Both the position numbers and the translations under genes were made by a program. The notes under the pieces were generated by a model. The model made no database searches. It had not been told where the DNA came from and was given only the letters and a program-made list of their open reading frames with translations. From positions 186,001-250,000 of the IMG/VR virus record IMGVR_UViG_3300023179_000009: 64,000 nt of DNA, one strand, 5' to 3'. This document shows positions 7,431 through 64,000 of this stretch, one piece after another. Each line of letters starts with the position of its first letter. The first letter of the stretch is position 1.

Positions 7431-8117
7431 ATGGGAATGTTTGATTATATTAAAATAGATGAATCTATTCATTTACCTCTACCAGAGGAAATGAAGAAAT
7501 TTAATATTGAGTTTCAAACAAAGTCTCTCGACAATTCCATGTCCACTTATCTTATAGCAGATGATCGCAATTTGTATGAATTAGATGCACTTTGGGATTG
7601 TGAAAAGAAATCAAACGAACCAGTTAAAAAAATAAATCTTCAATATCATGGGAAAATAAGATTTTACGCATACGAACAAACAGACACTTTGGATTTTTGC
7701 GCAGATTTTGAAGCCAAGTTCACAGATGGGGTTTTATATGCGATAAATTTAATAGATTATAAAAAAATTGAACACGAATCTATTAAATTAAAGATGCAAA
7801 AATTCTTAGAAAAAGATAAAAAAGAACGCAATAAAATATCTTATAGATTTAAAAAATTCATTAAAAACAAAACTCTTTCTATATTTAAAATAAAATCTAA
7901 TCAACTAAGATTTACCTCACCAGAGGTTCTTTTATTTTTTTCAAAGCCAAGAGAAAAAGAAAATAATTATGGTTTGTATTTTAATAAAATCGACACAGGT
8001 TTTAAGTTTACAAAAACAGATTTCTATATGGAAGTAAAAATGCAAGTTTTAGGATTTGGTTTTATTTTTCAAAAATTTAATCTCGACCAACCCTCTTTAG
8101 ATGCGGGGTCGAAATGA
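7431..8117 (+). CDS. hypothetical phage protein (MGMFDYI...FQTKSLD type)
   Basis: AGGAG SD; N-terminus of a type common in phage hypotheticals. Confidence 0.7.
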   Translation: MGMFDYIKIDESIHLPLPEEMKKFNIEFQTKSLDNSMSTYLIADDRNLYELDALWDCEKKSNEPVKKINLQYHGKIRFYAYEQTDTLDFCADFEAKFTDGVLYAINLIDYKKIEHESIKLKMQKFLEKDKKERNKISYRFKKFIKNKTLSIFKIKSNQLRFTSPEVLLFFSKPREKENNYGLYFNKIDTGFKFTKTDFYMEVKMQVLGFGFIFQKFNLDQPSLDAGSK

Positions 8118-53157: not shown

Positions 53158-53628
53158 TTGCACTTTGAACCTTCGGATAACCGAATAGTAATTTGGGGTA
53201 TGAGTTGTGTTGGCAAAACGACTTTTGCCAACACAATGAAAAGCCACACCTACTATTGTTTTGACGCCTTGTTCCAGTGGCATTTAATTGAAACATTTGG
53301 TCTCTCCGCCACAGAAAACTTTAAATATATTCAAAGAACTTGTGATGCAAATAAATTTGTTATAGACGGTTGGAACTTAGCCGATAAAAAAGGAGAATTT
53401 TTTCCAAATGATTGCACCGTGTACATACTTTGGGCACCTTATGAAAAAATTATTTCGCAATACAGAGTGCCAGTTTTAGATCAATTAGAACACAAAAACA
53501 TGTACAAAAAGTGGTATCATGAAATTGATATTTCTTTTTTCCCAAAAGTTAAATTTTTTTTGAGTGATGATACATTCCAAGAAATATCCAAAAAAGATTA
53601 TCTTACTTTTTTAGAACATAATCAATAA
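53158..53628 (+). CDS. P-loop nucleotide-kinase-like protein
   Basis: GMSCVGKTT Walker A; VIDG. Confidence 0.7.
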   Translation: MHFEPSDNRIVIWGMSCVGKTTFANTMKSHTYYCFDALFQWHLIETFGLSATENFKYIQRTCDANKFVIDGWNLADKKGEFFPNDCTVYILWAPYEKIISQYRVPVLDQLEHKNMYKKWYHEIDISFFPKVKFFLSDDTFQEISKKDYLTFLEHNQ

Positions 53629-54568
53629 AATCCATTCCAAGTTGAAATTCCGGAAACTGCTTGGTTTTAACAGTTGTCATTATTCGTTCTGCTATTTTTG
53701 GTATTTTAAAGAAAGGATCAACTTTTGATGTTATTTCTCGCCTGTGAACTTTTGTCAAACCTGCATTTTCAATAAATTTATCATAGGTTGCCAAAGGTGT
53801 GGTAACTCCTATGTTGTCTTCTTCATATTTTCTTTCTGGAACTAATTTATTAAGTTCATCTGGAGTAAACACAAGGTGAATATAAGATTTATTTAAATGA
53901 TGATACAAGTGAGTTGCATGTTTTGATGTAAAAGGATGACATCTCATATAAATTTGTCCATCAGGGGCCAATGCATCTTTTACCTTTTTGAGAAAGTCAA
54001 CAGGGTTTTCATTTTTTAAATGATCTAGAACATCAAATATAACAATTACATTAAACGGTCCTTGCGACAGAACCTCATTAAAGTTAGTAGTCAAGAGCAG
54101 GCCGTCACGTTTCAAAGATTCCCACTTGCTATTTTCTTCAATATCGTAACCAACCGAAATCAAAGGTTCATACTCGGCTGCAACATGAGCAACATGACCT
54201 TCTCCGCAACCCATATCCAAAACTTTTAAACCCTTCAAATCTGGTTCGATCATAAGTTCTACTATTCCACGGCCACGTTCCAATTTATCATTCTCATTAT
54301 CTGGGTCGCAAATTAGATTAGGGTTGACAGCTTCGGGCCACTTTTCACTGTCTAGTGCTTTTTTAAGTGCTTCAAAACTTTCTAAATCTTCGCCAGCATA
54401 CTCGGGAGGAACCTCTGTGTTTTTTTGAGATGAAACATTATTTTTTTGATAAGATTGATTTGTTGTTGTGATTGGCGAATCGCCATCTTCTAAAATGGCT
54501 TGTTTTAGATCTAACAATCCTTTCATTATCAAATCTATGGTCGCATTAACTTTTTGCATATTTGGCAT
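53603..54568 (-). CDS. class I SAM methyltransferase (paralog 3 of 3)
   Basis: VLDMGCGEG, DVLDH, HPFTSKHATHLY. Confidence 0.85.
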   Translation of the reverse strand: MPNMQKVNATIDLIMKGLLDLKQAILEDGDSPITTTNQSYQKNNVSSQKNTEVPPEYAGEDLESFEALKKALDSEKWPEAVNPNLICDPDNENDKLERGRGIVELMIEPDLKGLKVLDMGCGEGHVAHVAAEYEPLISVGYDIEENSKWESLKRDGLLLTTNFNEVLSQGPFNVIVIFDVLDHLKNENPVDFLKKVKDALAPDGQIYMRCHPFTSKHATHLYHHLNKSYIHLVFTPDELNKLVPERKYEEDNIGVTTPLATYDKFIENAGLTKVHRREITSKVDPFFKIPKIAERIMTTVKTKQFPEFQLGMDFIDYVLKK

Positions 54569-54623
54569 GTTTACCTCAAATTTTTTAATTTGTTTCTATT
54601 ATTATAGTGATTATTTTTAAAAA

Positions 54624-55442
54624 TTGGATTATTTAGTGACAAAATTAGCAGTTGTTTTAAATGTTCACGATAAACCGGATGTGGTGAGGGACACAATAGA
54701 ATCCATACAAACCTTTGCAACTAAAAATATAGTTGTCTTAGTCGATGGTGCTTGTTGGTCTAAAATGAAAAAAGAACCAATGGATGCAGCTAAAGTCGAG
54801 GGGTTTTATCACAATACTCATAAAGCACCATATAGAAACGTCGCACTGTCTTTGCAAACGATTGCAGATGTTTACCCAGAGTCAGATTGGTATTGTTACA
54901 CAGAGTACGATGTACTTTTTGCTTCTGAGAGATTCAGATATAATTTAAAAATGGCTGAGGAAAAAGGAATATGGATGTTAGGAAATGATGGTCGTGTGGA
55001 TTATGAAAAAATGCCTTTAATACAAGCCATGTTTGATAAACCTTTTAAAAGTATTTATTATTTGCTTGGATGTTGTTTGTTTTTTCATAAAAACTTTATA
55101 AACAAATTAAAAGAAATCGATTTCTTTAATCGTTTTTTAAATTTGACCAACGGTTTTACAGGAGGATTTTTTCCTTTTTATCGAGGGTATGATCTAAGTG
55201 AACATTTATACCCAACAATTTGCAGACACCTCGGCGGCAACATAGGTGTTTTTGCACACTATGAACAAACAGGTAATTGGCATGGCTCTCATAAGTTTTT
55301 TCCTGTTCGTTGGATGCCGGAAATCGACCCCGTAAAAGAAAACTTTCCCGAAGCTAGCATAATACACCCATTAAAATCTTTCGATCATCCGATTCGTGTT
55401 TATCACCGTGAAAAGAGGAAAAATGCAAAACTCTCAATTTGA
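54624..55442 (+). CDS. putative GT-A glycosyltransferase
   Basis: VLVDG, TEYDVL, IHPLK. Confidence 0.55.
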   Translation: MDYLVTKLAVVLNVHDKPDVVRDTIESIQTFATKNIVVLVDGACWSKMKKEPMDAAKVEGFYHNTHKAPYRNVALSLQTIADVYPESDWYCYTEYDVLFASERFRYNLKMAEEKGIWMLGNDGRVDYEKMPLIQAMFDKPFKSIYYLLGCCLFFHKNFINKLKEIDFFNRFLNLTNGFTGGFFPFYRGYDLSEHLYPTICRHLGGNIGVFAHYEQTGNWHGSHKFFPVRWMPEIDPVKENFPEASIIHPLKSFDHPIRVYHREKRKNAKLSI

Positions 55443-56022
55443 AGCAAAAAGTTTAGGAATTGTTTTTGATTTATCGGCAAGGCTTGAAAAAGAAGGAAGA
55501 CGAATTGTTGATATCGTCAAAAAAAACATGATCGATATTGTTCGCAAATGTTTAATTGATGGCGAGGATAGCATGTACCTTTACAACCCTGATTTAATAG
55601 ATGCTTATTTTAAACATGGGGAGCAAGTTTGTGCATTAGGAAATTACAATACAGACGGATATTCGTTTGATCTTTCGATGGCTCTTCGTCAAACTTTGTA
55701 TGTCCTAATGTCTGAAGACGAGGATTTTCAAAAGTACCTACTGTTCGTCACCGACAGGCTAGCGAACAAGTCTGCTTTAGAAAAAGCTTTTCATATCAAT
55801 AAAAAAGAAAAAATAGGATGCAAGTTCATATTAGTTGGAGTAGGCGATTACTATAATAAAAATATATTAGAAAATTATGCTAAAAAAGAAAATGTTTTTT
55901 ATATTCATTTAAACAATCCAGCAGAATTAAAATTTCCCCAAATTAAGGAGTATTTGGATGGCAAAATCCAATCATGTGGCACGACCGATGAACGATGTGA
56001 GCTTATTCAACTCTCAAGTTGA
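55423..56022 (+). CDS. von Willebrand A-like domain protein
   Basis: IVFDLS, LFVTD, ILVGVG. Confidence 0.6.
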   Translation: MQNSQFEAKSLGIVFDLSARLEKEGRRIVDIVKKNMIDIVRKCLIDGEDSMYLYNPDLIDAYFKHGEQVCALGNYNTDGYSFDLSMALRQTLYVLMSEDEDFQKYLLFVTDRLANKSALEKAFHINKKEKIGCKFILVGVGDYYNKNILENYAKKENVFYIHLNNPAELKFPQIKEYLDGKIQSCGTTDERCELIQLSS

Positions 56023-56767
56023 TATCATAGTGCCGTTTTACGGTCAATATGACAAAGTAATGAAACTGATCGATAGCCTTTTTAGGTTGACTAGAAGTAA
56101 TTATTATCAACTTATTCTAGTAGACGATTGTTCACCCAACCCAGATTTTATAAGAAATATAGATTTAAATGCTCAAAAAAATTCACAAAGGTTGCGACAA
56201 AGAAATGTTGTAAGGGCAATAAGAACCGAGGAGCAAAAAGGCTTTGCTGGTGCTTGCAAGGTCGGTTTTGAAGCTGGTGAAAGTCCATATGTTTGTTTTT
56301 TAAATTCCGACTGCATTATAGAAGACGCTGGTTGGTTAAAAAACATGGGTGAAAGTTTGCTAAAATTAAAGTCGGAAGGAGTTCGTGTCGTTTCGGCTGT
56401 GACCAACAATCCTGTTGGCGGTGATATATCCCAAAAAGGCGAAAGATTCGTTCGAGAGGAAAACGATGTGATTCTTAAAGACGATAGTTTTTTAAGTTTA
56501 TTTTGCTTTATGTGCCATAGAGAGTTGTTTTCTAAAATTGATGGTTTTATTAAGGAATATCCTTTTGGTTATTATGAAGACGAAGAATTCGCAGCACGAT
56601 TAAAAAAATATAGTTTTAAACAAGCGGTTTGTAGAAGTGCTTATGTTTATCATGAAGGACAAGCAACAGTTCATCAGATATGGAAGTCGCATCCAACAGC
56701 AAGAAAAATTATGGAAGAAGACAACCGAAAAAGGTGCATAGAAGACATGAAATTACTCAAATCTTAG
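55958..56767 (+). CDS. GT2 glycosyltransferase
   Basis: DIIVP, LVDDCS, GFAGAC, FLNSD, YYEDEE. Confidence 0.88.
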   Translation: MAKSNHVARPMNDVSLFNSQVDIIVPFYGQYDKVMKLIDSLFRLTRSNYYQLILVDDCSPNPDFIRNIDLNAQKNSQRLRQRNVVRAIRTEEQKGFAGACKVGFEAGESPYVCFLNSDCIIEDAGWLKNMGESLLKLKSEGVRVVSAVTNNPVGGDISQKGERFVREENDVILKDDSFLSLFCFMCHRELFSKIDGFIKEYPFGYYEDEEFAARLKKYSFKQAVCRSAYVYHEGQATVHQIWKSHPTARKIMEEDNRKRCIEDMKLLKS

Positions 56768-56843: not shown

Positions 56844-57083
56844 ATGGCTGCTATTTTAGTTCCAGCTATTACTGGAAACAAATGTGTTGGATCTTACACC
56901 GATGGCAGTGTTCTTCGCAAACACTTTTGCAAAAAAGGCACTGATGCTAATGGTGACGCAATTTACACCTGTGCCACATGGCGCAGATTTAGAGTAAACT
57001 GCCCAAAAATTAATTTTCAATGCAGTTCTTTGTCAGAAGCTTGGGTGGCTGCTGCTGTAGTTTGTCGCCAAAGACTCTTCTAA
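56844..57083 (+). CDS. small Cys-rich hypothetical protein
   Basis: Strong AGGAGG SD; own terminator. Confidence 0.7.
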   Translation: MAAILVPAITGNKCVGSYTDGSVLRKHFCKKGTDANGDAIYTCATWRRFRVNCPKINFQCSSLSEAWVAAAVVCRQRLF

Positions 57084-57109: not shown

Positions 57110-57143
57110 AAGAGACGCACTTTTTGTGCGTCTCTTTTTTTTT
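57110..57143 (+). terminator. Rho-independent terminator
   Basis: AAGAGACGCAC/GTGCGTCTCTT + T run. Confidence 0.85.
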
Positions 57144-57146
57144 AGG

Positions 57147-57318
57147 TTGACAACTCGTATCTTACACGTAGAATGTTCGCCAGTTCGGATTTTTTGGTCC
57201 GAAAAAGCCAACTGGATGGCTTGAATATTCTCAGCCATACGCTGGTTTTTCGATTTGGATCCCAAGAAATTTTACCAACAGGAGTTGGTGTTTCTGGGTT
57301 TTTTGAAAGGATGCTGCC
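57147..57318 (+). promoter_or_regulatory. sigma70 promoter and structured 5' leader of parB with GGA motifs
   Basis: TTGACA-16-TAGAAT; hairpin ACCAAC-AGGA-GTTGGT; SD AAAGGATG. Confidence 0.6.
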
Positions 57319-58788
57319 ATGCAATCGAAAATTAATCGCAACGATTCGGCCTCAAACAAGTTCAGCCTTATTCCGCTATCGGAAATAGTTATCGTGGAAA
57401 GACCAGCGGAAGGCGAAGAAAATGAAAAACTGTTCTTCAATCCACGTGGTCCGAGTTCTTTTACTCCGGATCGAATGATGCAACTTCAGTATTCAATCCG
57501 CACAGACGGCATTCAACAACCTCCGATTGTAAGATTAAATGAAGATTCTTATGAATTGATCGCTGGCGAAAGAAGGATTCGTTCATGCCAGAGCATCGTA
57601 GAGAGTGATTTGCCATGTTTTGATGAAGATAATCCTCGTCGTGATTCTTACGATAAAGGAGATATTGTTCTTTATAAAGGTCGCTTCGGCACTGTTGTTA
57701 AAGAATTGAGTGATGAAATCATCGTGGATTTCGATGATGATTGCATTGGATCTCAAGAAAGAAAAAATTGTCCGATTGAAGATGTTTTTGCCACGGTTTC
57801 TGGCAGCGAACTGTATGAGAACGTTCCCTGCAAAATTGTAACCGACTGTTCTGATCAAAGAGCGTTGAGACTCGCTTTTACAGAAAATGACCAGTCGGAG
57901 CCTTTGACTATTGCCGAAGAAGTTGCTTTAGTTGAGCGGCTTTCAAGGTCCGGGTTAAAGCAAGAAGAAATTGCCGAACTGCTTGGCTCAAACATAACTT
58001 GGGTGTGCCAAACAGGCAATTTTAGATCTCAATTGCCAAATAAAGCATTTGATAAACTTCTTAAAGGCGAAATGACTCGTCATGTTGCCGTGAATTTTTT
58101 GAGTTACTCTCCTGACGATAGAGAAGAATTATTTGAAGCAACACTTGAGGCAGAAACCCAAGAGACTCAAGAAAAAATTGCTGAACTGACAGAGGAGAAG
58201 GAACGCCTGGAGGACGAAGAAGAAATAGCAATATCGGATGCAATCAAGGCCGATGATGATGGCGACGAAAAAACCGCCAGGAAACTTCGTAAGAAAGCCG
58301 CTGGTCTTGCTTCGAAAGCAACAAAGGCCGCAGGCCGTCTTGAACGTGTGAAGCGTGAAAAGGGCAACATCAAGCAAGGTCACGTTAAGTCTGGGGCCAA
58401 AGCGAAAGGGTTGCAGCCCAAGAAGATCAAGTCGTTAGACAAAAACGATATTGAGGCCATCTTTGTTGATGGAATTCAAGAGTTCCTTGAGGGAGAAGGC
58501 GTTTGTGGAATAACCGGAGAAACAGTTCCAGCAGAATATGCTGCTATTGTTTTATCAACAGCAAAAGCGATTATTGCTGGCATCTCCGATCCTGTTCACC
58601 CAATTCGTGAATATATGTGCGAAATTGGTGTTTGGGAATTGCCCAAGCGTAAAAAGAAAAAGAAGGAAGAAATATCTTTTGATGAAGATGATATCGAAGA
58701 AGATGAAACCATTAGCGAAGATGATGATTTTGAAAATCACTTGAAGAGTTACGATGATGATGAAGACGAGCAAATTGATGATGAGTGA
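57319..58788 (+). CDS. ParB/RepB/Spo0J-family protein with insertion and acidic tail
   Basis: NPR, SIRTDGIQQPPIV, LIAGERRIR, LAFTEN, HTH (GLKQEEIAELLG). Confidence 0.88.
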   Translation: MQSKINRNDSASNKFSLIPLSEIVIVERPAEGEENEKLFFNPRGPSSFTPDRMMQLQYSIRTDGIQQPPIVRLNEDSYELIAGERRIRSCQSIVESDLPCFDEDNPRRDSYDKGDIVLYKGRFGTVVKELSDEIIVDFDDDCIGSQERKNCPIEDVFATVSGSELYENVPCKIVTDCSDQRALRLAFTENDQSEPLTIAEEVALVERLSRSGLKQEEIAELLGSNITWVCQTGNFRSQLPNKAFDKLLKGEMTRHVAVNFLSYSPDDREELFEATLEAETQETQEKIAELTEEKERLEDEEEIAISDAIKADDDGDEKTARKLRKKAAGLASKATKAAGRLERVKREKGNIKQGHVKSGAKAKGLQPKKIKSLDKNDIEAIFVDGIQEFLEGEGVCGITGETVPAEYAAIVLSTAKAIIAGISDPVHPIREYMCEIGVWELPKRKKKKKEEISFDEDDIEEDETISEDDDFENHLKSYDDDEDEQIDDE

Positions 58789-58811
58789 TTCTCTCTCAAA
58801 TTAATAACATG

Positions 58812-58848
58812 AACGGCTCCGATGAAAACATCGGAGCCGTTTTTTTTT
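58812..58848 (+). terminator. Rho-independent terminator
   Basis: AACGGCTCCGATG/CATCGGAGCCGTT + T run. Confidence 0.9.
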
Positions 58849-58865
58849 AAATTTTAATATATATT

Positions 58866-59153
58866 ATGATGCTAATTATGTGTCCTTATTGCGGCTATCA
58901 CTTATCTAAACCATTAACAAATGGAATATGTTCTTGTGTCAATTGTAAAAGAGTGTTTGATAGTTCCAGACTCAACTCCCTCCTCTCTGCTAGTTGGGTT
59001 GTGAAAAGAAAAAATATCACCAACCCAATAGATCTTGCAAATCGATGCAAAATTTCAGAGGATGATGCCAATCTTGTGATCGATTTAGTAAATGATCAAT
59101 GTTACGACTTTCAAGAATTTTTAAAAATTCTTGAAAACATGGTTGAGCAATAA
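58866..59153 (+). CDS. zinc-ribbon hypothetical protein
   Basis: CPYC...CVNC. Confidence 0.65.
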   Translation: MMLIMCPYCGYHLSKPLTNGICSCVNCKRVFDSSRLNSLLSASWVVKRKNITNPIDLANRCKISEDDANLVIDLVNDQCYDFQEFLKILENMVEQ

Positions 59154-59198
59154 TTATTTTTGTGTTATGATTTTGTCTCTTTATTTTCGTTAGATAAA

Positions 59199-60263
59199 AT
59201 GACCGAGCAACAAGAAAATTCTCCAAGATATGTTCGACCAATAAAAATATTTGGTTTAAATGCAACAAAGAATTATGCAAAAAAAGTTGCAAATCATTTG
59301 CACCTAGATCTGACCCCCATCACAGAAAAATATTATGATGACGGTGAGCCTTACGTAAAAAGTGGAATTGAATATAGCGACAGTCCGGTGGGGAATGTTC
59401 GTGGACACGATGTTTTTGTTATTCAATCTCTTTATAGCGACAACTCTGAATCGATTAGCGACAAGATGATGAAATTGTGTATATTTTGCGGAAGTTTAAA
59501 AGATGCTTCTTCCCATGAAGTTATTCCAATAATTCCTCATCTTGGTTGGGCAAGACAAGATAGAAAAACAGAGAGCAGAGCGCCAATTGCCACAAAATAC
59601 ATTGCTAGAATTTTGGAATCAGTTGGCATAAGTCGAGTTTTACTCTTTGAGTGCCACAATATAGCAGCCGAGCAAAATGCGTTTAATGTTCCAATAGATA
59701 ATCTAGAAGCAAAAAATTTAATTGCCGATTGGTGTGCCTCAGAATTAATAAAAGAAAATAAAACAAAAAATATCAAAGTCCTCAGTCCCGACAGCGGGGC
59801 TTTAGGCAGATGTGAACGATTTAGAAATTCGCTTCTCAAAAAATTACGTGATAGAAATGTTATGTTGGATGATATTGAAATTGTTATTTTTGATAAATTG
59901 AGAATAAAGGGCCAAGTTAAAGGTGGAAGAATAGTTGGAGATGTTAAGGGAGCAGATGTTATAGCCTTTGATGACATGATATCTACTGGATCAACTATGG
60001 GCAAAGCCTCAAAAGCAGTTCAAGAGAATGGTGGTAAAATTTGGTCTATTTGTGCTACACATGGATTATTTTGCGGCAAAGCTAATGATGTATTGAGAGA
60101 AATAGATGCAAAAGTAGTTGTTACCGATACTGTTGAGCCTTTTAGGCTGACAGATGAGAATAAAAGCAAACTTTATATTGTAGATACTTCAAAAATGGTA
60201 GCCGATGCCGTCAAAAGAATTCATAACGGCACCGGCTCCATAAGCGAACTTCTTCGCACTTAA
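59199..60263 (+). CDS. prs: ribose-phosphate pyrophosphokinase family protein
   Basis: DGE, VRGHDVFVIQS, ARQDRK, SPDSG, DDMISTGST, ATHGLF, VTDT. Confidence 0.92.
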   Translation: MTEQQENSPRYVRPIKIFGLNATKNYAKKVANHLHLDLTPITEKYYDDGEPYVKSGIEYSDSPVGNVRGHDVFVIQSLYSDNSESISDKMMKLCIFCGSLKDASSHEVIPIIPHLGWARQDRKTESRAPIATKYIARILESVGISRVLLFECHNIAAEQNAFNVPIDNLEAKNLIADWCASELIKENKTKNIKVLSPDSGALGRCERFRNSLLKKLRDRNVMLDDIEIVIFDKLRIKGQVKGGRIVGDVKGADVIAFDDMISTGSTMGKASKAVQENGGKIWSICATHGLFCGKANDVLREIDAKVVVTDTVEPFRLTDENKSKLYIVDTSKMVADAVKRIHNGTGSISELLRT

Positions 60264-60466
60264 TTCGTTGTCAAATCACTCAGAGTGTTAAGATTTGAAG
60301 TGTTTTTGTCAACTAATTCACTTCTTAGAATGGTAACAGAGTCTGAGGCTTGAATGCCTAACCTGACTTTGTTTGAATCAATTCTAACCACGGTCAGTTC
60401 GACTTGTTCTTTTTCGTTCAATTTCAAAAGGATTTTTTCATCCCTCTTTCTGGATAGGACTAGCAA
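60260..60466 (-). CDS. csrA: carbon storage regulator CsrA/RsmA
   Basis: MLVLSRK..EKI...VVRI..NKVRLGIQA...ILRSEL; GGGAGG SD, TTG start. Confidence 0.92.
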   Translation of the reverse strand: MLVLSRKRDEKILLKLNEKEQVELTVVRIDSNKVRLGIQASDSVTILRSELVDKNTSNLNTLSDLTTN

Positions 60467-60541
60467 TTTGGGCCTCCCTTCTCTAGTGTCCTAATAATAG
60501 AGTAGTTATCCAATAAAATTTAATTTTTTTTTGCAAAGGTC

Positions 60542-60656: not shown

Positions 60657-61253
60657 ATGAAGACGATGACTAAGGGTGGTTTTGGTGTTCGGTTTCAGCA
60701 AATTGAGCAGATTCAGCAAGAGGCTCGTGAAAAGTTTCAAGAGTATCAGCGTTCTCTCAAGGAAGCCCAGGTTGCCTTGAGGAAGTTGGCCGAGGTTGCA
60801 TCGGAAACTTGCGACAATGTTGGAGAAGGTGTTGATTTTGCCACCATGGCTCCTGCAAAGCGGCGAAAAGGTCGCCCTGCAAAGGCCAAGGCTACTGTGG
60901 TCAAGAATGGTCGCAGAAAGTCTCGCAAGATTGGTGCCAAGACCAAAACCCGTGTGCGTGCTGCTTCCAACGGCGAAAGCAAGATTGGCTTGAAACGGTA
61001 TACTTTTGAATTGCTTGGCCGTCCCGCTGCCAGCATCAAGAAGGTGATTTCGGGCTATCCCGAGAACGGCAAGGGTCTAAAGGTTAGCGAGATCAAGGAG
61101 ATCATCGAGAACGAAGGCAAGTGGAGTACTGAGAGTGAAATCGGGCCTCAAATCCATAACGCTCTGTTCGCCTTGCGCAACGCCAAGAAGGTTGAGCGTA
61201 ACGAAGAAGATCGTCGCTATCACCTTGTTGAAGGTGCCGAATACGACGCTTGA
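60657..61253 (+). CDS. putative nucleoid-associated/histone-like DNA-binding protein
   Basis: N-terminal coiled coil, K/R/A-rich linker with AT-hook-like RRKGRPAK, C-terminal winged-helix-like region. Confidence 0.6.
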   Translation: MKTMTKGGFGVRFQQIEQIQQEAREKFQEYQRSLKEAQVALRKLAEVASETCDNVGEGVDFATMAPAKRRKGRPAKAKATVVKNGRRKSRKIGAKTKTRVRAASNGESKIGLKRYTFELLGRPAASIKKVISGYPENGKGLKVSEIKEIIENEGKWSTESEIGPQIHNALFALRNAKKVERNEEDRRYHLVEGAEYDA

Positions 61254-61312: not shown

Positions 61313-61342
61313 CTTTTTGTACCTTAGTTACTAAGATAGTTT

Positions 61343-62167
61343 ATGATTAATGCTCAAGAATCACTTCCAAAAATTAGTTGCTTGATGGTCACAGCCAATA
61401 ATCGTTTTGATTATTTTAAAAAAAGTGTGCAATGTTATGTTGATCAAACTTACCCAAACCGTGAATTAGTTATAGTAACCGAAGCACCAAGAGATTATCA
61501 AAAAAAAATTAAAGATTATCTCTCAGGGAGGGATGATGTTCATTTTGTTTTTTTAAATGGATGGTATTCCTTGGGTGCCTTAAGAAACATTTCTATGTCT
61601 CTTTGTTATGGAGATGTTTTTGTTCAATGGGACGATGATGATTTTAATGCCCCAGAAAGATTAGCCGTTCAATATAGTTACTTGTCTAGACATCCAAAGG
61701 CACGTGTGTGTTTCCTGTCGGATCAACTTCATTATTACTTCAATTCCGGTTATTTATTTTGGGAAGATTGGGCACAATATTGTTCTAATGGTATTAAAAA
61801 ATGCAGTTTGATACCAGGAACTATTATGGCTTATAGGAGACATTTTCATAATAAATATCCATCTGCCGGGAGTTACTGCTCCGCTGGCGAAGATTCTGTT
61901 TTAACTACAACTCTTTGCGAGAATGATATTGATAATGATCAAGTTGTTTTAATGTCCAACTATGGATATATGCAAATGTACACATTTCATGGGAATAATG
62001 TTTGGGATGAAGAACACCATTTAAAAATATCAAAAAACAGATCGTTGCCTGTGAGTTATATCAATAGAAACAGACAAAGAATCTGCGATACAATAAATTA
62101 TTTGGAACTTGAAGGAACAATAAAAGTTATGGGCCGAGAGGGCTTGGCATTCACTCATGAGGTTTAA
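61343..62167 (+). CDS. GT2 glycosyltransferase
   Basis: ISCLMVT, QTYPN.EL, LGALRN, QWDDDD, GED. Confidence 0.88.
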   Translation: MINAQESLPKISCLMVTANNRFDYFKKSVQCYVDQTYPNRELVIVTEAPRDYQKKIKDYLSGRDDVHFVFLNGWYSLGALRNISMSLCYGDVFVQWDDDDFNAPERLAVQYSYLSRHPKARVCFLSDQLHYYFNSGYLFWEDWAQYCSNGIKKCSLIPGTIMAYRRHFHNKYPSAGSYCSAGEDSVLTTTLCENDIDNDQVVLMSNYGYMQMYTFHGNNVWDEEHHLKISKNRSLPVSYINRNRQRICDTINYLELEGTIKVMGREGLAFTHEV

Positions 62168-62169
62168 AA

Positions 62170-62988
62170 ATGATTTCAGGAAAACTGCCATTAATTTCTT
62201 GTGTTTGTGTTACCAAAGATCGTTTTGAATTATTAAAAAAATCAATTTTTTGTTATTTAAATCAAAATTACCAAAATAAAAATTTAATCATATTGAGTCA
62301 AAGCAATGATGACACTAATAAAAAAATAGAAAAATACATAAAAGATTTATCAAGAGAAGATATTCTTTTTCTTGCTGCTCCAACTATGTTGACGTTAGGG
62401 GCCATGAGAAACACATCTATTGAATTGGCCACCGGCGAAATAATTTGTCAATGGGACGATGACGATTTGTATCACCCCAACAGACTGACTAATCAATATA
62501 AGTGTTTAAAAAGCGATAATAGAAATGTTGCTTCTTTGTATTCAAATTTTTTAAAGTATTTTGCCAATTCAAAAGAAGTATATTGGTGTGATTGGTTAAA
62601 CGAATCAGAGTACTCCCACAGATTTTTGTGTGGTTCGGTGATGTTTTACAAATCTCTTTTTCATATGTGGGAAAATTTTTATCCTGAGCGTGGTGCTCAG
62701 AGTTGTTGTGAGGAAGATTTAAATGTTCTTGAGAAGTTGATGTTAAAAGGGTCCATAGCCCCAGTCTTGGATGGCAATGAATATGTTTATGTTTATCACG
62801 GCGTTAACACCTATGATTTAGATCACCACAAATTAACCTTGGACATTAGATGGGGTAAAAAAGTTTATACAAAAGAAGATTTATTAAAAAAGCAAGATTT
62901 GATTGAGGAAACTTTTGATTTGATACAAATGGACGATATTGTTAAAATTAAGAGTTTAGGAGAAGTTGCTTTTACTTACACAATATGA
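62170..62988 (+). CDS. GT2 glycosyltransferase (tandem paralog)
   Basis: ISCVCVT, LGAMRN, QWDDDD, EED, YHG.NT. Confidence 0.88.
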   Translation: MISGKLPLISCVCVTKDRFELLKKSIFCYLNQNYQNKNLIILSQSNDDTNKKIEKYIKDLSREDILFLAAPTMLTLGAMRNTSIELATGEIICQWDDDDLYHPNRLTNQYKCLKSDNRNVASLYSNFLKYFANSKEVYWCDWLNESEYSHRFLCGSVMFYKSLFHMWENFYPERGAQSCCEEDLNVLEKLMLKGSIAPVLDGNEYVYVYHGVNTYDLDHHKLTLDIRWGKKVYTKEDLLKKQDLIEETFDLIQMDDIVKIKSLGEVAFTYTI

Positions 62989-64000
62989 AATTCGAACAAA
63001 AGTACCCCACGGCTTTATCAAACGAGAGATTTGAATTTGAATACTCTTATGTGACCAAAAGCCCAAAACTAGGACAGTGTCGTTGGTGTTCTTCTTTTAC
63101 CAAATGGATAGATGTTCTTTTTCAAGTTAACGTTTGTAGCGAAGAGTGCAACGCTGAGATGTGGCACCGCTATAGGAATGATCAAAAATTAAATGGTACT
63201 TATAAAAATTTTGAGGATCATTTTGAACAAGTAAAAAAAGAATTAAAATTGGGAGAAAAGGCCACGGATGATTGGAAAGACATATTAATTGTTGTTCATG
63301 ATCAACTTGACTATATCAAAGATTGCGTTGATTCGGTACAAAAATATACAAAAAATTACCATTTGTTTATTTGGGACAATGCATCCGGCAAAGAGACTCA
63401 AGAATATATACAAAATTTATTGTTAAAATATGATCCAAACAAAGATAAGCATTATAAATTAACAACTATAAGAAGAGAGAAAAATGTTGGATTTGTGGTT
63501 CCAAATAATGAAATGATTGCTCTCGGGGAAAGTCCCTATATCATCCTACTAAATTCTGATACCAAAGTTTTTGAAAATTGGGACAATACCATGATAGCAT
63601 TTTTAAAAAACAACCCGGAATATGCCCAGGTTGGCTATTGGGGAGGACACCTTAATGCTGATGGGCGTGGATTTGGCGGGGCGAATGGAGAACGTGTTGA
63701 CTATATCCCAGGTTGGTGCTTTTGCATACCACGTGAGACCTACGATCAATTTGGTTTGTTCGATGAACATCTCAAATTCGCTTATTGCGAAGACTCTGAT
63801 TTTTCTTTGAGACTGAAAGAAGGTGGAAAAAAGATTTATTCACTTTACGCTCCACTTGTTCACCACTATCAAAACAAAACTGTAAAACAAGTCGAAAAAG
63901 AAGGTGAATTGGATCTTCAAGCAACTTTTGATCACAATCATTCCTACTTTAAAAATCGTTGGAAAGAATATTTGTCTAAAAATCGAGTTCTTTTGGATCA
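62985..64000 (+). CDS. GT2 glycosyltransferase with N-terminal Cys4 domain (runs off right edge; not in ORF track)
   Basis: Hand translation: CRWC...CSEEC, DILIVVHDQL, IWDNAS, NVGF..PNN, LLNSD, YCEDSDFSLR. Confidence 0.85.
   Translation, partial: MKFEQKYPTALSNERFEFEYSYVTKSPKLGQCRWCSSFTKWIDVLFQVNVCSEECNAEMWHRYRNDQKLNGTYKNFEDHFEQVKKELKLGEKATDDWKDILIVVHDQLDYIKDCVDSVQKYTKNYHLFIWDNASGKETQEYIQNLLLKYDPNKDKHYKLTTIRREKNVGFVVPNNEMIALGESPYIILLNSDTKVFENWDNTMIAFLKNNPEYAQVGYWGGHLNADGRGFGGANGERVDYIPGWCFCIPRETYDQFGLFDEHLKFAYCEDSDFSLRLKEGGKKIYSLYAPLVHHYQNKTVKQVEKEGELDLQATFDHNHSYFKNRWKEYLSKNRVLLD

What the first reader, a model, noticed from the sequence alone, without database searches (positions are those of the whole stretch)
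57147..60466. Phage CsrA with a candidate cognate target: the parB leader
Seen: an intact csrA (60260-60466). About 3 kb away, the roughly 140-nt structured parB leader has CAGGAG at the apex of a long hairpin (57261-57298) and AAGGATG overlapping the SD (57307-57313), plus further GGA triplets. Established: CsrA dimers bridge a hairpin-loop GGA and an SD GGA to block translation. Inference: phage-encoded post-transcriptional control of ParB, and possible hijack of the host Csr regulon. The loop is a 4-nt AGGA rather than the ideal ARGGAU hexaloop.
Basis: partly seen in the sequence, partly recalled or inferred. Interest (0 to 1): 0.6.

Follow-up and report, generated by a model that had tools for sequence, protein, structure and literature searches.

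The report
Huge-phage CsrA; parB-leader link unproven
A 459-kb freshwater phage carries a real, highly conserved CsrA RNA-binding regulator and a real structured leader in front of a ParB-like gene, but the loop motif proposed to link the two is not conserved, so the link stays an untested idea.

Summary
csrA (60260-60466, minus) is intact. The ParB-like gene has a strong sigma-70-type promoter, a leader of about 138 nt, an AGGA tetraloop on a -15 kcal/mol hairpin, and AAGGAUG at the Shine-Dalgarno (SD) site.

The window lies in a 458,813-bp freshwater huge phage. csrA is a core gene of its clade: all 17 relatives that reach far enough carry it, at 58-98% identity, while ParB is only 38-65% identical in all but the nearest relative.

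The proposed CsrA-to-parB link is weak.
- The SD GGA is generic; 53% of this phage's genes have one there.
- Five GGAs in a leader is ordinary (3 of 128 long upstream regions).
- In the closest relative, which has a near-identical CsrA, the loop reads AUGC. The stem is kept by compensatory changes, and the first 81 nt of the leader are invariant.

Two results keep a weaker version alive. The leader ranks first of 128 for a stable hairpin-loop GGA, and 9 of 23 orthologous leaders have one. A second GGA hexaloop hairpin (57205-57222) sits in the invariant part.

csrA's own leader, with two conserved GGAs, is the better candidate target. Phage-borne csrA genes are already described.

The parts
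57110..57136 (+). Intrinsic terminator of the upstream 79-aa gene (56844-57083)
   Evidence: 11-bp stem followed by a T run
57147..57174 (+). Sigma-70-type promoter of the ParB-like gene (TTGACA-16-TAGAAT)
   Evidence: 11 of 12 match. A TTGAC(A/T)-N16-18-TAnAnn match lies at the same place in 23 of 28 orthologous loci. The spacer evolves freely: 5 of 16 bases differ from L003.
57181..57318 (+). Predicted 5' leader of the ParB-like mRNA, about 138 nt; the start site is inferred, not mapped
   Evidence: Position follows from the promoter. Fold z = -2.5. Orthologous leaders are 97-255 nt, most 124-198. The first 81 nt are identical in L003, although 27-44% of four-fold sites differ in the flanking genes.
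57185..57202 (+). Hairpin H1; the GGA at 57187-57189 lies in its stem
   Evidence: -8.0 kcal/mol; invariant in L003
57205..57222 (+). Hairpin H2: 6-bp stem AAGCCA/UGGCUU with hexaloop ACUGGA (GGA at 57214-57216). It competes with an alternative pairing to 57232-57237.
   Evidence: -7.3 kcal/mol when folded alone, but the loop forms in only 3% of full-leader ensemble samples. The AGCCA...UGGCU stem with a GGA just inside it recurs in L003, L099, L089, L090, L091 and L092.
57231..57250 (+). Small hairpin (57231-57245) followed by UUUUU; weakly terminator-like
   Evidence: -4.8 kcal/mol; invariant in L003
57261..57304 (+). Long hairpin (57261-57298) with AGGA tetraloop (57280-57283), followed by UUUUUU (57299-57304)
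   Evidence: -15.0 kcal/mol; loop present in 100% of ensemble samples. In L003 the loop is AUGC and the stem is kept by compensatory changes. Near-identical lake strains keep AGGA and vary only at 57299 T>C.
57307..57313 (+). Shine-Dalgarno region AAGGAUG, 7 nt before the ATG
   Evidence: GAAAGGA(A/U)GC is conserved before most orthologous starts. Other genes also keep their own start-region sequence across the clade. AAGGA is this phage's commonest SD 5-mer.
57319..58788 (+). ParB-like protein, 489 aa: ParB N-terminal domain with the GERR motif and an acidic tail; no ParA partner found
   Evidence: Pfam ParB_N 1.4e-10. PHROGs 'ParB-like partition protein'. 64 full-length relatives, all metagenomic. 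No AAA_31-type ParA and no second ParB_N in the genome.
58811..58842 (.). Bidirectional terminator after the ParB-like gene
   Evidence: 14-bp stem with T runs on both strands
58866..59153 (+). Conserved 95-aa cysteine-rich protein (CxxC...CxxC) of unknown function
   Evidence: ORF; no Pfam or PHROG match; syntenic in all relatives
59199..60263 (+). Ribose-phosphate pyrophosphokinase (PRPP synthetase, prs)
   Evidence: Pfam Pribosyltran_N 1.2e-29 and Pribosyl_synth 4.6e-16; phrog_619
60260..60466 (-). csrA (CsrA1 subtype), 68 aa, TTG start; its stop overlaps the prs stop by 4 nt
   Evidence: Pfam CsrA 1.9e-16. Aligned to E. coli CsrA, it keeps L2, L4, R6, K7 and the arginine matching R44, and has a 4-residue insertion. 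58-98% identical in 17 syntenic loci. More than 120 metagenomic relatives at 70% identity or above. RNA-library contig on 60318-60465.
60467..60510 (-). csrA 5' region: conserved AACTACTCTATTAT block (60494-60507), upstream GGA (60489-60491), SD GGGAGG (60473-60478, GGA at 60475-60477)
   Evidence: Alignment of 17 loci. The TACCTACTCTTATA block, a variable 2-17-nt spacer, (A/G)GGAC and AGAAnGGAGGC are kept in about 14 of 17. The block is unique in the genome.

Best explanation
The window belongs to a freshwater huge phage whose clade keeps a phage-specific CsrA (CsrA1) as a core gene.

By homology, I expect CsrA1 to act in trans as a GGA-binding translational regulator of phage and/or host mRNAs. 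Its best-supported cis target is its own short leader. That leader carries two conserved GGAs 14 nt apart, one of them in the SD, which is the same logic as the known self-repression of E. coli csrA.

The ParB-like gene is an orphan ParB-N-domain gene. It is transcribed from a conserved host-type promoter through a selectively constrained, structured 5' leader. Its AGGA loop is a lineage-specific, unconstrained sequence rather than a conserved CsrA site. The SD GGA is simply the phage's normal SD.

Shown here: gene identities, synteny, the conserved promoter, the pattern of constraint, and loss of the loop GGA. Inferred: RNA binding by CsrA1, self-regulation, and an attenuator or stability role for the hairpin.
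For: CsrA identity and residues.

Core-gene status and fixed position convergent with prs, in 17 of 17 loci that reach that far, plus two gene tables.

CsrA is 58-98% identical where ParB is 38-65% in all but the nearest relative.

csrA leader with two conserved GGAs.

Comparison of the window with L003:
- 8 differences in the leader, all within 57262-57318.
- 0 differences in the first 81 nt, against 27-44% divergence at four-fold sites of the flanking genes.
- 2 of 4 loop bases changed (AGGA to AUGC).
- All three stem changes preserve pairing; hairpin energy is -15.0 versus -13.1 kcal/mol.

Genericity and counts:
- SD GGA is generic, and each gene keeps its own start-region sequence across the clade.
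- The GGA count is ordinary within the genome.
- Across 23 leaders there are 74 non-SD GGAs against 60.4 expected from shuffles.

A stem plus U run recurs in WIN, L003, L099, L100, L101 and L116.

An RNA library holds contigs on csrA but none on parB.
Against: - The parB leader ranks first of 128 upstream regions in this phage for a stable hairpin-loop GGA.
- 9 of 23 orthologous leaders have such a loop. Each beats at least 97% of its own shuffles, and the loops often read GGAU, e.g. CGGAU on a covarying stem in L089, L090 and L091.
- GGA is the joint commonest triplet in stable loops, in 8 of 43.
- The invariant 5' part holds three more GGAs, one in a potential hexaloop. CsrA control of parB through other sites is therefore not excluded.
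- Terminator-like hairpins occur in only 6-8 of 23 leaders, so the attenuator reading is also only partly conserved.
- Nothing here measures binding, termination or translation.
Confidence: 0.5

Rival explanations
1. A CsrA1 dimer bridges the AGGA loop (57280-57283) and the SD GGA (57309-57311), 28 nt apart, and blocks translation of the ParB-like mRNA.
For: The geometry fits the known CsrA bridging range of about 10-63 nt (established knowledge from E. coli CsrA). The loop is present in 100% of ensemble samples, and this leader ranks first of 128. Near-identical lake strains keep AGGA. Similar GGA-loop hairpins lie 47-48 nt before the start in L089, L090 and L091.
Against: In L003 the loop is AUGC, despite a 98%-identical CsrA and a preserved stem. 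13 of 23 orthologous leaders show little or no loop-held GGA. L089 and L091 have GAGG-type SDs without GGA. The SD GGA occurs at 53% of genes.
Confidence: 0.12
2. CsrA1 does regulate the ParB-like leader, but through the constrained 5' part rather than the apex loop. The sites would be the H2 hexaloop GGA (57214-57216), UUUGGAUC (57257-57259) and the SD. It could work by shifting the competing pairings AGCCA/UGGCU/AGCCA/GCUGG and so changing termination or SD access.
For: The first 81 nt are invariant against L003. The AGCCA...UGGCU stem with an enclosed GGA recurs in seven leaders. In L099 the same GGA can sit either in a hairpin loop or in the 5' arm of a terminator-like stem. The minimum-energy folds of WIN and L003 choose different alternatives for identical sequence here.
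Against: H2 forms in only 3% of ensemble samples of the full leader. In L089-L092 the homologous GGA is predicted to be base-paired. Invariance could equally reflect a DNA operator, a riboswitch-like element or another protein's site. GGA is not enriched overall (74 versus 60.4).
Confidence: 0.2
3. The 'leader' is mainly a small RNA of about 120 nt that ends at the hairpin plus U run (57181 to about 57304). It would carry four GGAs and act as an RsmY/RsmZ-like decoy for CsrA, with read-through giving parB mRNA.
For: A strong promoter, a terminator-like 3' end and GGAs in two potential loops. The 5' part is strongly constrained.
Against: Only 4 GGAs in about 120 nt against about 2.4 expected, far below known decoy RNAs. 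L003 has 3. No Rfam match. No RNA-library contig covers it. A genome-wide search for GGA-dense non-coding windows found none; the top hit proved to be coding.
Confidence: 0.05
4. The inverted repeats act at the DNA level, as operator or centromere-like sites for the ParB-like protein or another DNA-binding protein.
For: ParB-family proteins often regulate their own genes through nearby palindromes (established knowledge). The 5' leader DNA is invariant.
Against: None of the three palindromes recurs anywhere else in the 459-kb genome. The arm spacing of the AGCCA/TGGCT repeat varies from 3 to about 40 bp among relatives, which fits an RNA stem and not a protein operator. The stem changes are compensatory in the RNA sense.
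Confidence: 0.05

Closest known systems
CsrA/RsmA repression of mRNA leaders (E. coli glgC, cstA, pgaA; Pseudomonas RsmE-hcnA)
   Same: A CsrA-family protein with the RNA-binding residues kept. A leader with one GGA in a hairpin loop and one in the SD, 28 nt apart. In the relative L089 one site reads UUCACGGAUGA, close to the hcnA-type consensus as I recall it.
   Different: No binding or regulation data exist. The loop is a 4-nt AGGA that is lost in the closest relative. GGA is not enriched overall. CsrA1 has a 4-residue insertion between the first two strands and reaches only E of about 0.006 against solved CsrA structures.
Self-repression of csrA translation in E. coli (CsrA binding its own leader; established knowledge)
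   Same: csrA's own short leader carries two GGAs about 14 nt apart, the second inside the SD, and both are conserved in about 14 of 17 loci.
   Different: The transcription start is unmapped. In the window the upstream GGA lies only 1-2 nt after a possible -10 box, so it may sit at the very 5' end of the RNA. There are two sites rather than the four I recall for E. coli.
csrA genes on phages and other mobile elements (30 of 2517 phage genomes, including Pseudomonas phage rsmM alleles and Bcep22-like phages: PMC7366521; PHROG 'CsrA-like regulator' families 9500 and 8397)
   Same: A phage-borne CsrA homologue with no FliW partner.
   Different: Here it is a core, near-invariant gene of a clade of 100-690-kb phages, with a fixed position convergent with prs. 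The genome also holds a second, 30%-identical paralogue. I found no paper describing this clade's csrA.
Intrinsic-terminator attenuators in 5' leaders
   Same: A stable stem with G:C pairs at its base, followed by 5-6 U, between promoter and SD. Competing upstream pairings are present.
   Different: It is conserved in only 6-8 of 23 orthologous leaders. No leader peptide, Rfam riboswitch or known antiterminator was identified.

Membership tests
CsrA/RsmA protein family | Sequence match to the CsrA domain above the curated threshold | tested here: met
   Pfam PF02599 at 60.2 bits against a cut-off of 27, residues 1-54; phrog_9500 'CsrA-like regulator'
CsrA/RsmA protein family | RNA-binding residues of the first strand (L2, L4, R6, R7) and the last strand (V40, V42, R44, I47 in E. 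coli numbering) | tested here: met
   Alignment to 1Y00: L2, L4 and R6 kept; R7 becomes K; V40 kept; V42 becomes I; R44 kept; I47 becomes L. L2, L4, R6, K7 and R48 are invariant in 15 clade sequences.
CsrA/RsmA protein family | Interleaved homodimer fold | not tested
   No structure or complex prediction was run. The sequence match to solved CsrA chains is only marginal (E 0.006-0.02).
CsrA/RsmA protein family | Binds GGA-containing RNA | not testable with these tools
   Requires gel shift, footprinting or CLIP
CsrA-repressed mRNA leader | At least two GGA sites, one overlapping the SD or start codon, spaced about 10-63 nt apart | tested here: met
   GGAs at 57281 and 57309 are 28 nt apart. 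The test has little power, because 53% of genes have an SD GGA.
CsrA-repressed mRNA leader | An upstream GGA presented in a hairpin loop | tested here: met
   AGGA tetraloop in 100% of ensemble samples; rank 1 of 128 upstream regions
CsrA-repressed mRNA leader | The GGA sites are conserved in orthologous leaders of genomes that carry the regulator | tested here: not met
   The loop is AUGC in L003. 13 of 23 leaders show little or no loop-held GGA and one is intermediate. The loop changed at 2 of 4 positions while the first 81 nt of the leader are invariant.
CsrA-repressed mRNA leader | GGA over-represented relative to composition | tested here: inconclusive
   5 GGAs is reached by 3 of 128 upstream regions. 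Across 23 leaders, 74 observed against 60.4 expected. GGA occurs in 8 of 43 stable loops, the joint top triplet.
CsrA-repressed mRNA leader | CsrA-dependent change in translation or mRNA fate | not testable with these tools
   Requires reporter fusions with and without CsrA1
ParABS partition system | A ParB with a ParA ATPase partner and repeated parS sites | tested here: not met
   No AAA_31-type ParA match in the 459-kb genome. Only one ParB_N gene. The leader palindromes are not repeated anywhere. The gene is therefore best called 'ParB-like'.
Csr decoy small RNA (CsrB/RsmZ type) | Many GGA motifs in loops of a short non-coding RNA | tested here: not met
   No Rfam match. The densest non-coding GGA window proved to be coding. 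The leader has only 4 GGAs in about 120 nt.

The most novel reading that the evidence does not exclude
A clade of freshwater huge phages carries its own self-contained Csr circuit. A phage-specific CsrA1 would repress its own mRNA through a conserved pair of GGAs. It would also tune an early, host-promoter-driven ParB-like gene by binding GGA hairpins in a long leader whose alternative folds include a terminator, that is, CsrA-controlled attenuation. A second paralogue (CsrA2) would be free to act on host mRNAs.
Probability: 0.15. Interest if true: 0.65.

Novelty: new member of a known kind. Interest (0 to 1): 0.35.

Why it matters
Genome surveys have listed csrA genes in phages, but I found no paper that assigns one a target. 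If CsrA1 proved to be a core regulator of a widespread clade of lake huge phages, it would give a defined protein and two defined RNAs to test: its own leader and the parB leader. That would show how very large phages use post-transcriptional control. The practical value of this work is the negative result, plus better-chosen candidate sites: the csrA leader at 60473-60491 and hairpin H2 at 57205-57222.

Tried and rejected
- **csrA-negative relatives for the proposed contrast.** None found. All 17 syntenic loci that reach far enough, plus two gene tables, carry csrA. L097 shows no csrA in the 3.5 kb after parB and has the fewest leader GGAs. It is a rearranged 13.6-kb contig, so this says little.
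- **Relatives at intermediate distance, to polarise the loop change.** ParB identity jumps from 96% to 65%. Exact-pattern scans of IMG/VR found only L003's contig and an unrelated repeat-rich phage, L181.
- **Known RNA families.** No match at the gathering threshold in the window. No relevant match at E <= 1 in five relatives; the hits near 7500 fall in the acidic-tail coding repeats.
- **Decoy RNA.** A genome-wide scan for GGA density put one 'non-coding' window on top (G000 327755). It turned out to be a 122-aa gene that my gene caller had missed.
- **Repeated parS-like palindromes.** None.
- **The TACCTACTCT block upstream of csrA as a general phage promoter.** It is unique in the genome.
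- **A CUCU/AGAG hairpin around the csrA upstream GGA.** Rejected, because several relatives break it without compensation.
- **Host from CsrA.** No cellular relative above 47% identity in 185,579 species genomes. The Atlas gives only a weak Planctomycetota lead.
- **Solved structures.** No hit at the default threshold; marginal hits at E 0.006-0.02.
- **Expression.** One lake RNA library has contigs on csrA, on the 79-aa gene and on the start of the 198-aa gene, but none on parB. These are contigs, which cannot show RNA ends, and DNA carry-over is possible.
- **Not run.** The large representative-protein search and the structure and complex predictions, because the family scans had settled the proteins' identity.
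- **Operators' limits.** The one read-laying run used 3,901 letters, within the stated limit.


Full report
**What the window is.** The 64-kb window is bases 186001-250000 of a single 458,813-bp virus record with 35% G+C and a CheckV completeness of 91%. The same contig appears in a JGI metagenome. Near-identical DNA occurs in freshwater and lake metagenomes from several studies. It is therefore a freshwater huge phage.

**Checking the observation.**
- The csrA ORF (60260-60466, minus strand, TTG start, 68 aa) matches Pfam CsrA at 60.2 bits against a cut-off of 27.
- It also matches the PHROG family 'CsrA-like regulator'.
- Aligned to E. coli CsrA (1Y00), it keeps L2, L4, R6, K for R7, V40, I for V42, R44 and L for I47. 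It carries a 4-residue insertion after the first strand.
- Upstream of the ParB-like gene (ATG at 57319) lies the best promoter-like site of the region, TTGACA-16-TAGAAT at 57147-57174. It comes right after the terminator of the previous gene. This predicts a leader of about 138 nt.
- The leader folds better than shuffles (z = -2.5).
- The hairpin at 57261-57298 is stable (-15.0 kcal/mol, none of 200 shuffles as good) and has an AGGA loop.
- AAGGAUG sits at 57307-57313. The leader holds five GGAs in all.

**Is this more than chance within the genome?** I called genes crudely and compared all 128 upstream regions of at least 120 nt.
- Five GGAs is reached by 3 of 128 regions. A Poisson estimate of my own from the measured density would expect about 7. 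The count is ordinary.
- GGA lies in the SD zone of 53% of 586 genes. AAGGA is the commonest 5-mer there, at 17%. The SD GGA is just this phage's SD.
- A non-SD GGA held in a stable hairpin loop is rare. Only 3 of 128 regions score P >= 0.9. The parB leader ranks first, and one of the other two lies in a region my caller mis-annotated. The loop is the only unusual element.

**Relatives.**
- The ParB-like protein has 64 full-length relatives at 36-96% identity. All are metagenomic, and several sit on contigs of 437-664 kb.
- I fetched 27 orthologous loci.
- The gene order is conserved: 79-aa gene, ParB-like, 95-aa cysteine-rich protein, (optional inserts), prs, csrA convergent, then a 198-aa protein divergent.
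- Every locus that extends far enough has csrA, at 58-98% identity over the domain. ParB is only 38-65% identical in all but the nearest relative.
- The word search found 489 relatives of this CsrA. The top 120 are at least 70% identical, none carries an organism name, and many lie on contigs of 100-690 kb.
- csrA is therefore a strongly constrained core gene of the clade.

**The decisive comparison.** L003 has a ParB 96% identical and a CsrA 98% identical to the window's.
- Its flanking genes differ from the window's at 27% (79-aa gene) and 44% (parB) of four-fold degenerate sites.
- The promoter spacer differs at 5 of 16 bases.
- Against that background the leader is strongly constrained. 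There are 8 differences in 138 nt, all within 57262-57318. The first 81 nt are identical.
- Within the flagged hairpin, two of the four loop bases changed (AGGA to AUGC), removing the GGA.
- The three stem changes all preserve pairing: G57266:C57294 becomes A:U with loss of the bulged A, and C57262 becomes U, pairing with G. The L003 hairpin is still -13.1 kcal/mol.
- The stem is therefore selected and the loop sequence is not.
- Near-identical lake strains keep AGGA and vary only at 57158 and 57299.

**The wider clade.**
- A TTGAC(A/T)-N16-18-TAnAnn match lies at the same place in 23 of 28 loci. Leaders are 97-255 nt, most 124-198.
- Outside the promoter and the SD region the leaders are barely alignable.
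- Nine of 23 leaders have a non-SD GGA in a stable hairpin loop. Each beats at least 97% of its own dinucleotide shuffles.
- These loops often read GGAU. L089, L090 and L091 share a CGGAU loop on a stem with a compensatory A:U to G:C change.
- Thirteen leaders, including L003, show little or no loop-held GGA, and one is intermediate.
- Total non-SD GGAs are 74 against 60.4 expected.
- Among 43 stable loops, GGA occurs in 8. That makes it the joint top triplet, but three of the eight are one homologous hairpin and one is the SD itself.
- The SD-region motif GAAAGGA(A/U)GC is widely conserved. Other genes also keep their own start-region sequence across the clade, for example AGGAGGU for the 79-aa gene and GGAGGCCC for csrA. 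This is not specific evidence for CsrA.
- Taken together, GGA-loop hairpins recur in this leader more often than a naive expectation but are not conserved. A weaker form of the idea survives.

**Other features of the leader.**
- The invariant 5' part contains hairpin H2 (57205-57222). It has a 6-bp stem and an ACUGGA hexaloop, -7.3 kcal/mol when folded alone.
- Its AGCCA...UGGCU stem, with a GGA just inside, recurs in L003, L099 and L089-L092.
- In the full leader H2 competes with pairing of UGGCU to a downstream AGCCA. That downstream AGCCA can instead join a small hairpin followed by UUUUU (57231-57250).
- The long hairpin is followed by UUUUUU. Clean stem-plus-U-run elements also occur in L099, L100, L101 and L116.
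- This looks like an attenuator, but it is present in only 6-8 of 23 leaders.
- No Rfam family matches, and the palindromes are not repeated elsewhere in the genome.

**A better candidate target.**
- Upstream of csrA, 17 loci share a block TACCTACTCTTATA, a spacer of 2-17 nt, then (A/G)GGAC. After 6-9 more nt comes AGAAnGGAGGC just before the start codon.
- In the window the two GGAs are at 60489-60491 and 60475-60477 on the minus strand, 14 nt apart.
- Two conserved GGAs with one in the SD is the arrangement expected for CsrA self-repression, which is known in E. coli.
- This is inference. The start site is unmapped, and the sequence shows no significant fold.

**What 'parB' is.** It has only the ParB N-terminal domain. 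The genome has no AAA_31-type ParA and no second ParB_N gene. 'ParB-like' is the safe name. The phage has no FliW. It does have a second csrA paralogue outside the window, at G000 272241-272450, 30% identical to CsrA1.

**Host.** No cellular genome among 185,579 species has a CsrA above 47% identity to this one. The nearest Atlas clusters are viral. The nearest partly bacterial one is mostly Planctomycetota at 0.89, which the tool itself rates as a lead only. Frequent SD use suggests a host that relies on SD-led initiation.

**Expression.** One lake RNA library contains contigs at 95-99% identity on the 79-aa gene, on csrA (60318-60465, the deepest) and on the start of the 198-aa gene. None lies on parB or its leader. 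These are contigs, so they show neither RNA ends nor absence, and DNA carry-over cannot be excluded.

**Comparison with what is known.** A 2020 survey found csrA alleles in 30 of 2517 phage genomes (PMC7366521), and PHROGs holds CsrA-like families. My literature searches found no paper on csrA in huge phages; the 2020 huge-phage survey does not mention it. The protein is a new member of a known kind. The regulatory link is a hypothesis that fails its own conservation test in the form proposed.

**Verdict.**
- Observation: confirmed.
- Interpretation: partly supported. csrA is real; the apex-loop-plus-SD model for parB is not supported; a looser CsrA-leader link remains possible.
- My odds: about 0.5 that the two features are functionally independent in the way described under the best explanation. 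About 0.3 in total that CsrA1 acts on this leader by some route. The remainder goes to the minor rivals.

Noticed in passing
G000:C1:272241-272450 (locus L001:1501-1710), outside the window: A second csrA paralogue (CsrA2, 69 aa) that is only 30% identical to the window's CsrA1 and more canonical, with no insertion. Its leader has ACGGAAUCAAGGAAC just before the ATG. The relative L006 also has two csrA genes.
   Followed up: partly
window 60467-60510 (minus strand): The csrA 5' region is conserved across the clade: a TACCTACTCTTATA block that is unique in the genome, a variable spacer, (A/G)GGAC, then AGAAnGGAGGC. The two GGAs are 14 nt apart, which makes this a candidate self-regulatory site.
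   Followed up: partly
window 60260-60263; loci L003 9889-10134, L090 9975-10046, L092 9563-9637: prs and csrA converge, and their stop codons overlap by 4 nt. In relatives where prs is replaced by a divergent allele (about 50% identical), a 25-82-codon remnant of the window-type prs 3' end is still kept next to csrA. That stretch may serve csrA, for example as its 3' end.
   Followed up: no
window 58840-58865 and 61320-61342; orthologous sites in 12-22 loci: The 95-aa protein and the first glycosyltransferase lack an SD. Across the clade they keep (C)ATA(A/C)ATA and ACTCTAATA respectively, 5-6 nt before the ATG. This looks like -10 boxes for leaderless mRNAs. In the window the second motif is degenerate (ACTAAGATA).
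   Followed up: partly
loci L100, L102, L103, L116 (parB leaders of distant relatives): About 30-50 nt into the leader there is a strong SD-like AAGGAG. It is followed by a tiny ORF: Met-Val-stop in L102, Met-Ala-Ser-stop in L103, a start-stop in L116, and a 27-codon TTG ORF in L100. Group-A relatives have GGAGG paired to a downstream CUUCU/CCUCU instead.
   Followed up: no
window 60657-61253: The 198-aa protein divergent from csrA has a lysine- and arginine-rich stretch with a GRP core (RKGRPAKAK), resembling an AT-hook. It matches no Pfam or PHROG family. An RNA-library contig covers its 5' end.
   Followed up: no
window 53603-56767 and 61343-63998: The csrA/parB block is embedded in a cluster of family-2 glycosyltransferases and a SAM-dependent methyltransferase. 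The cluster is syntenic in all relatives and is followed there by a ClpX-like AAA+ gene.
   Followed up: no
G000:C1:327648-328016 (locus L095:349-717): A GGA-rich stretch of higher G+C that first looked like a non-coding decoy RNA. It is a 122-aa ORF masked by a longer antisense ORF in my gene calls.
   Followed up: yes
locus L181:2650-2850 (IMGVR_UViG_2700989028_000001): An unrelated phage contig with tandem copies of TTGGT(A/G)TTTTACCAAC-like units. By chance it matched the hairpin pattern.
   Followed up: no
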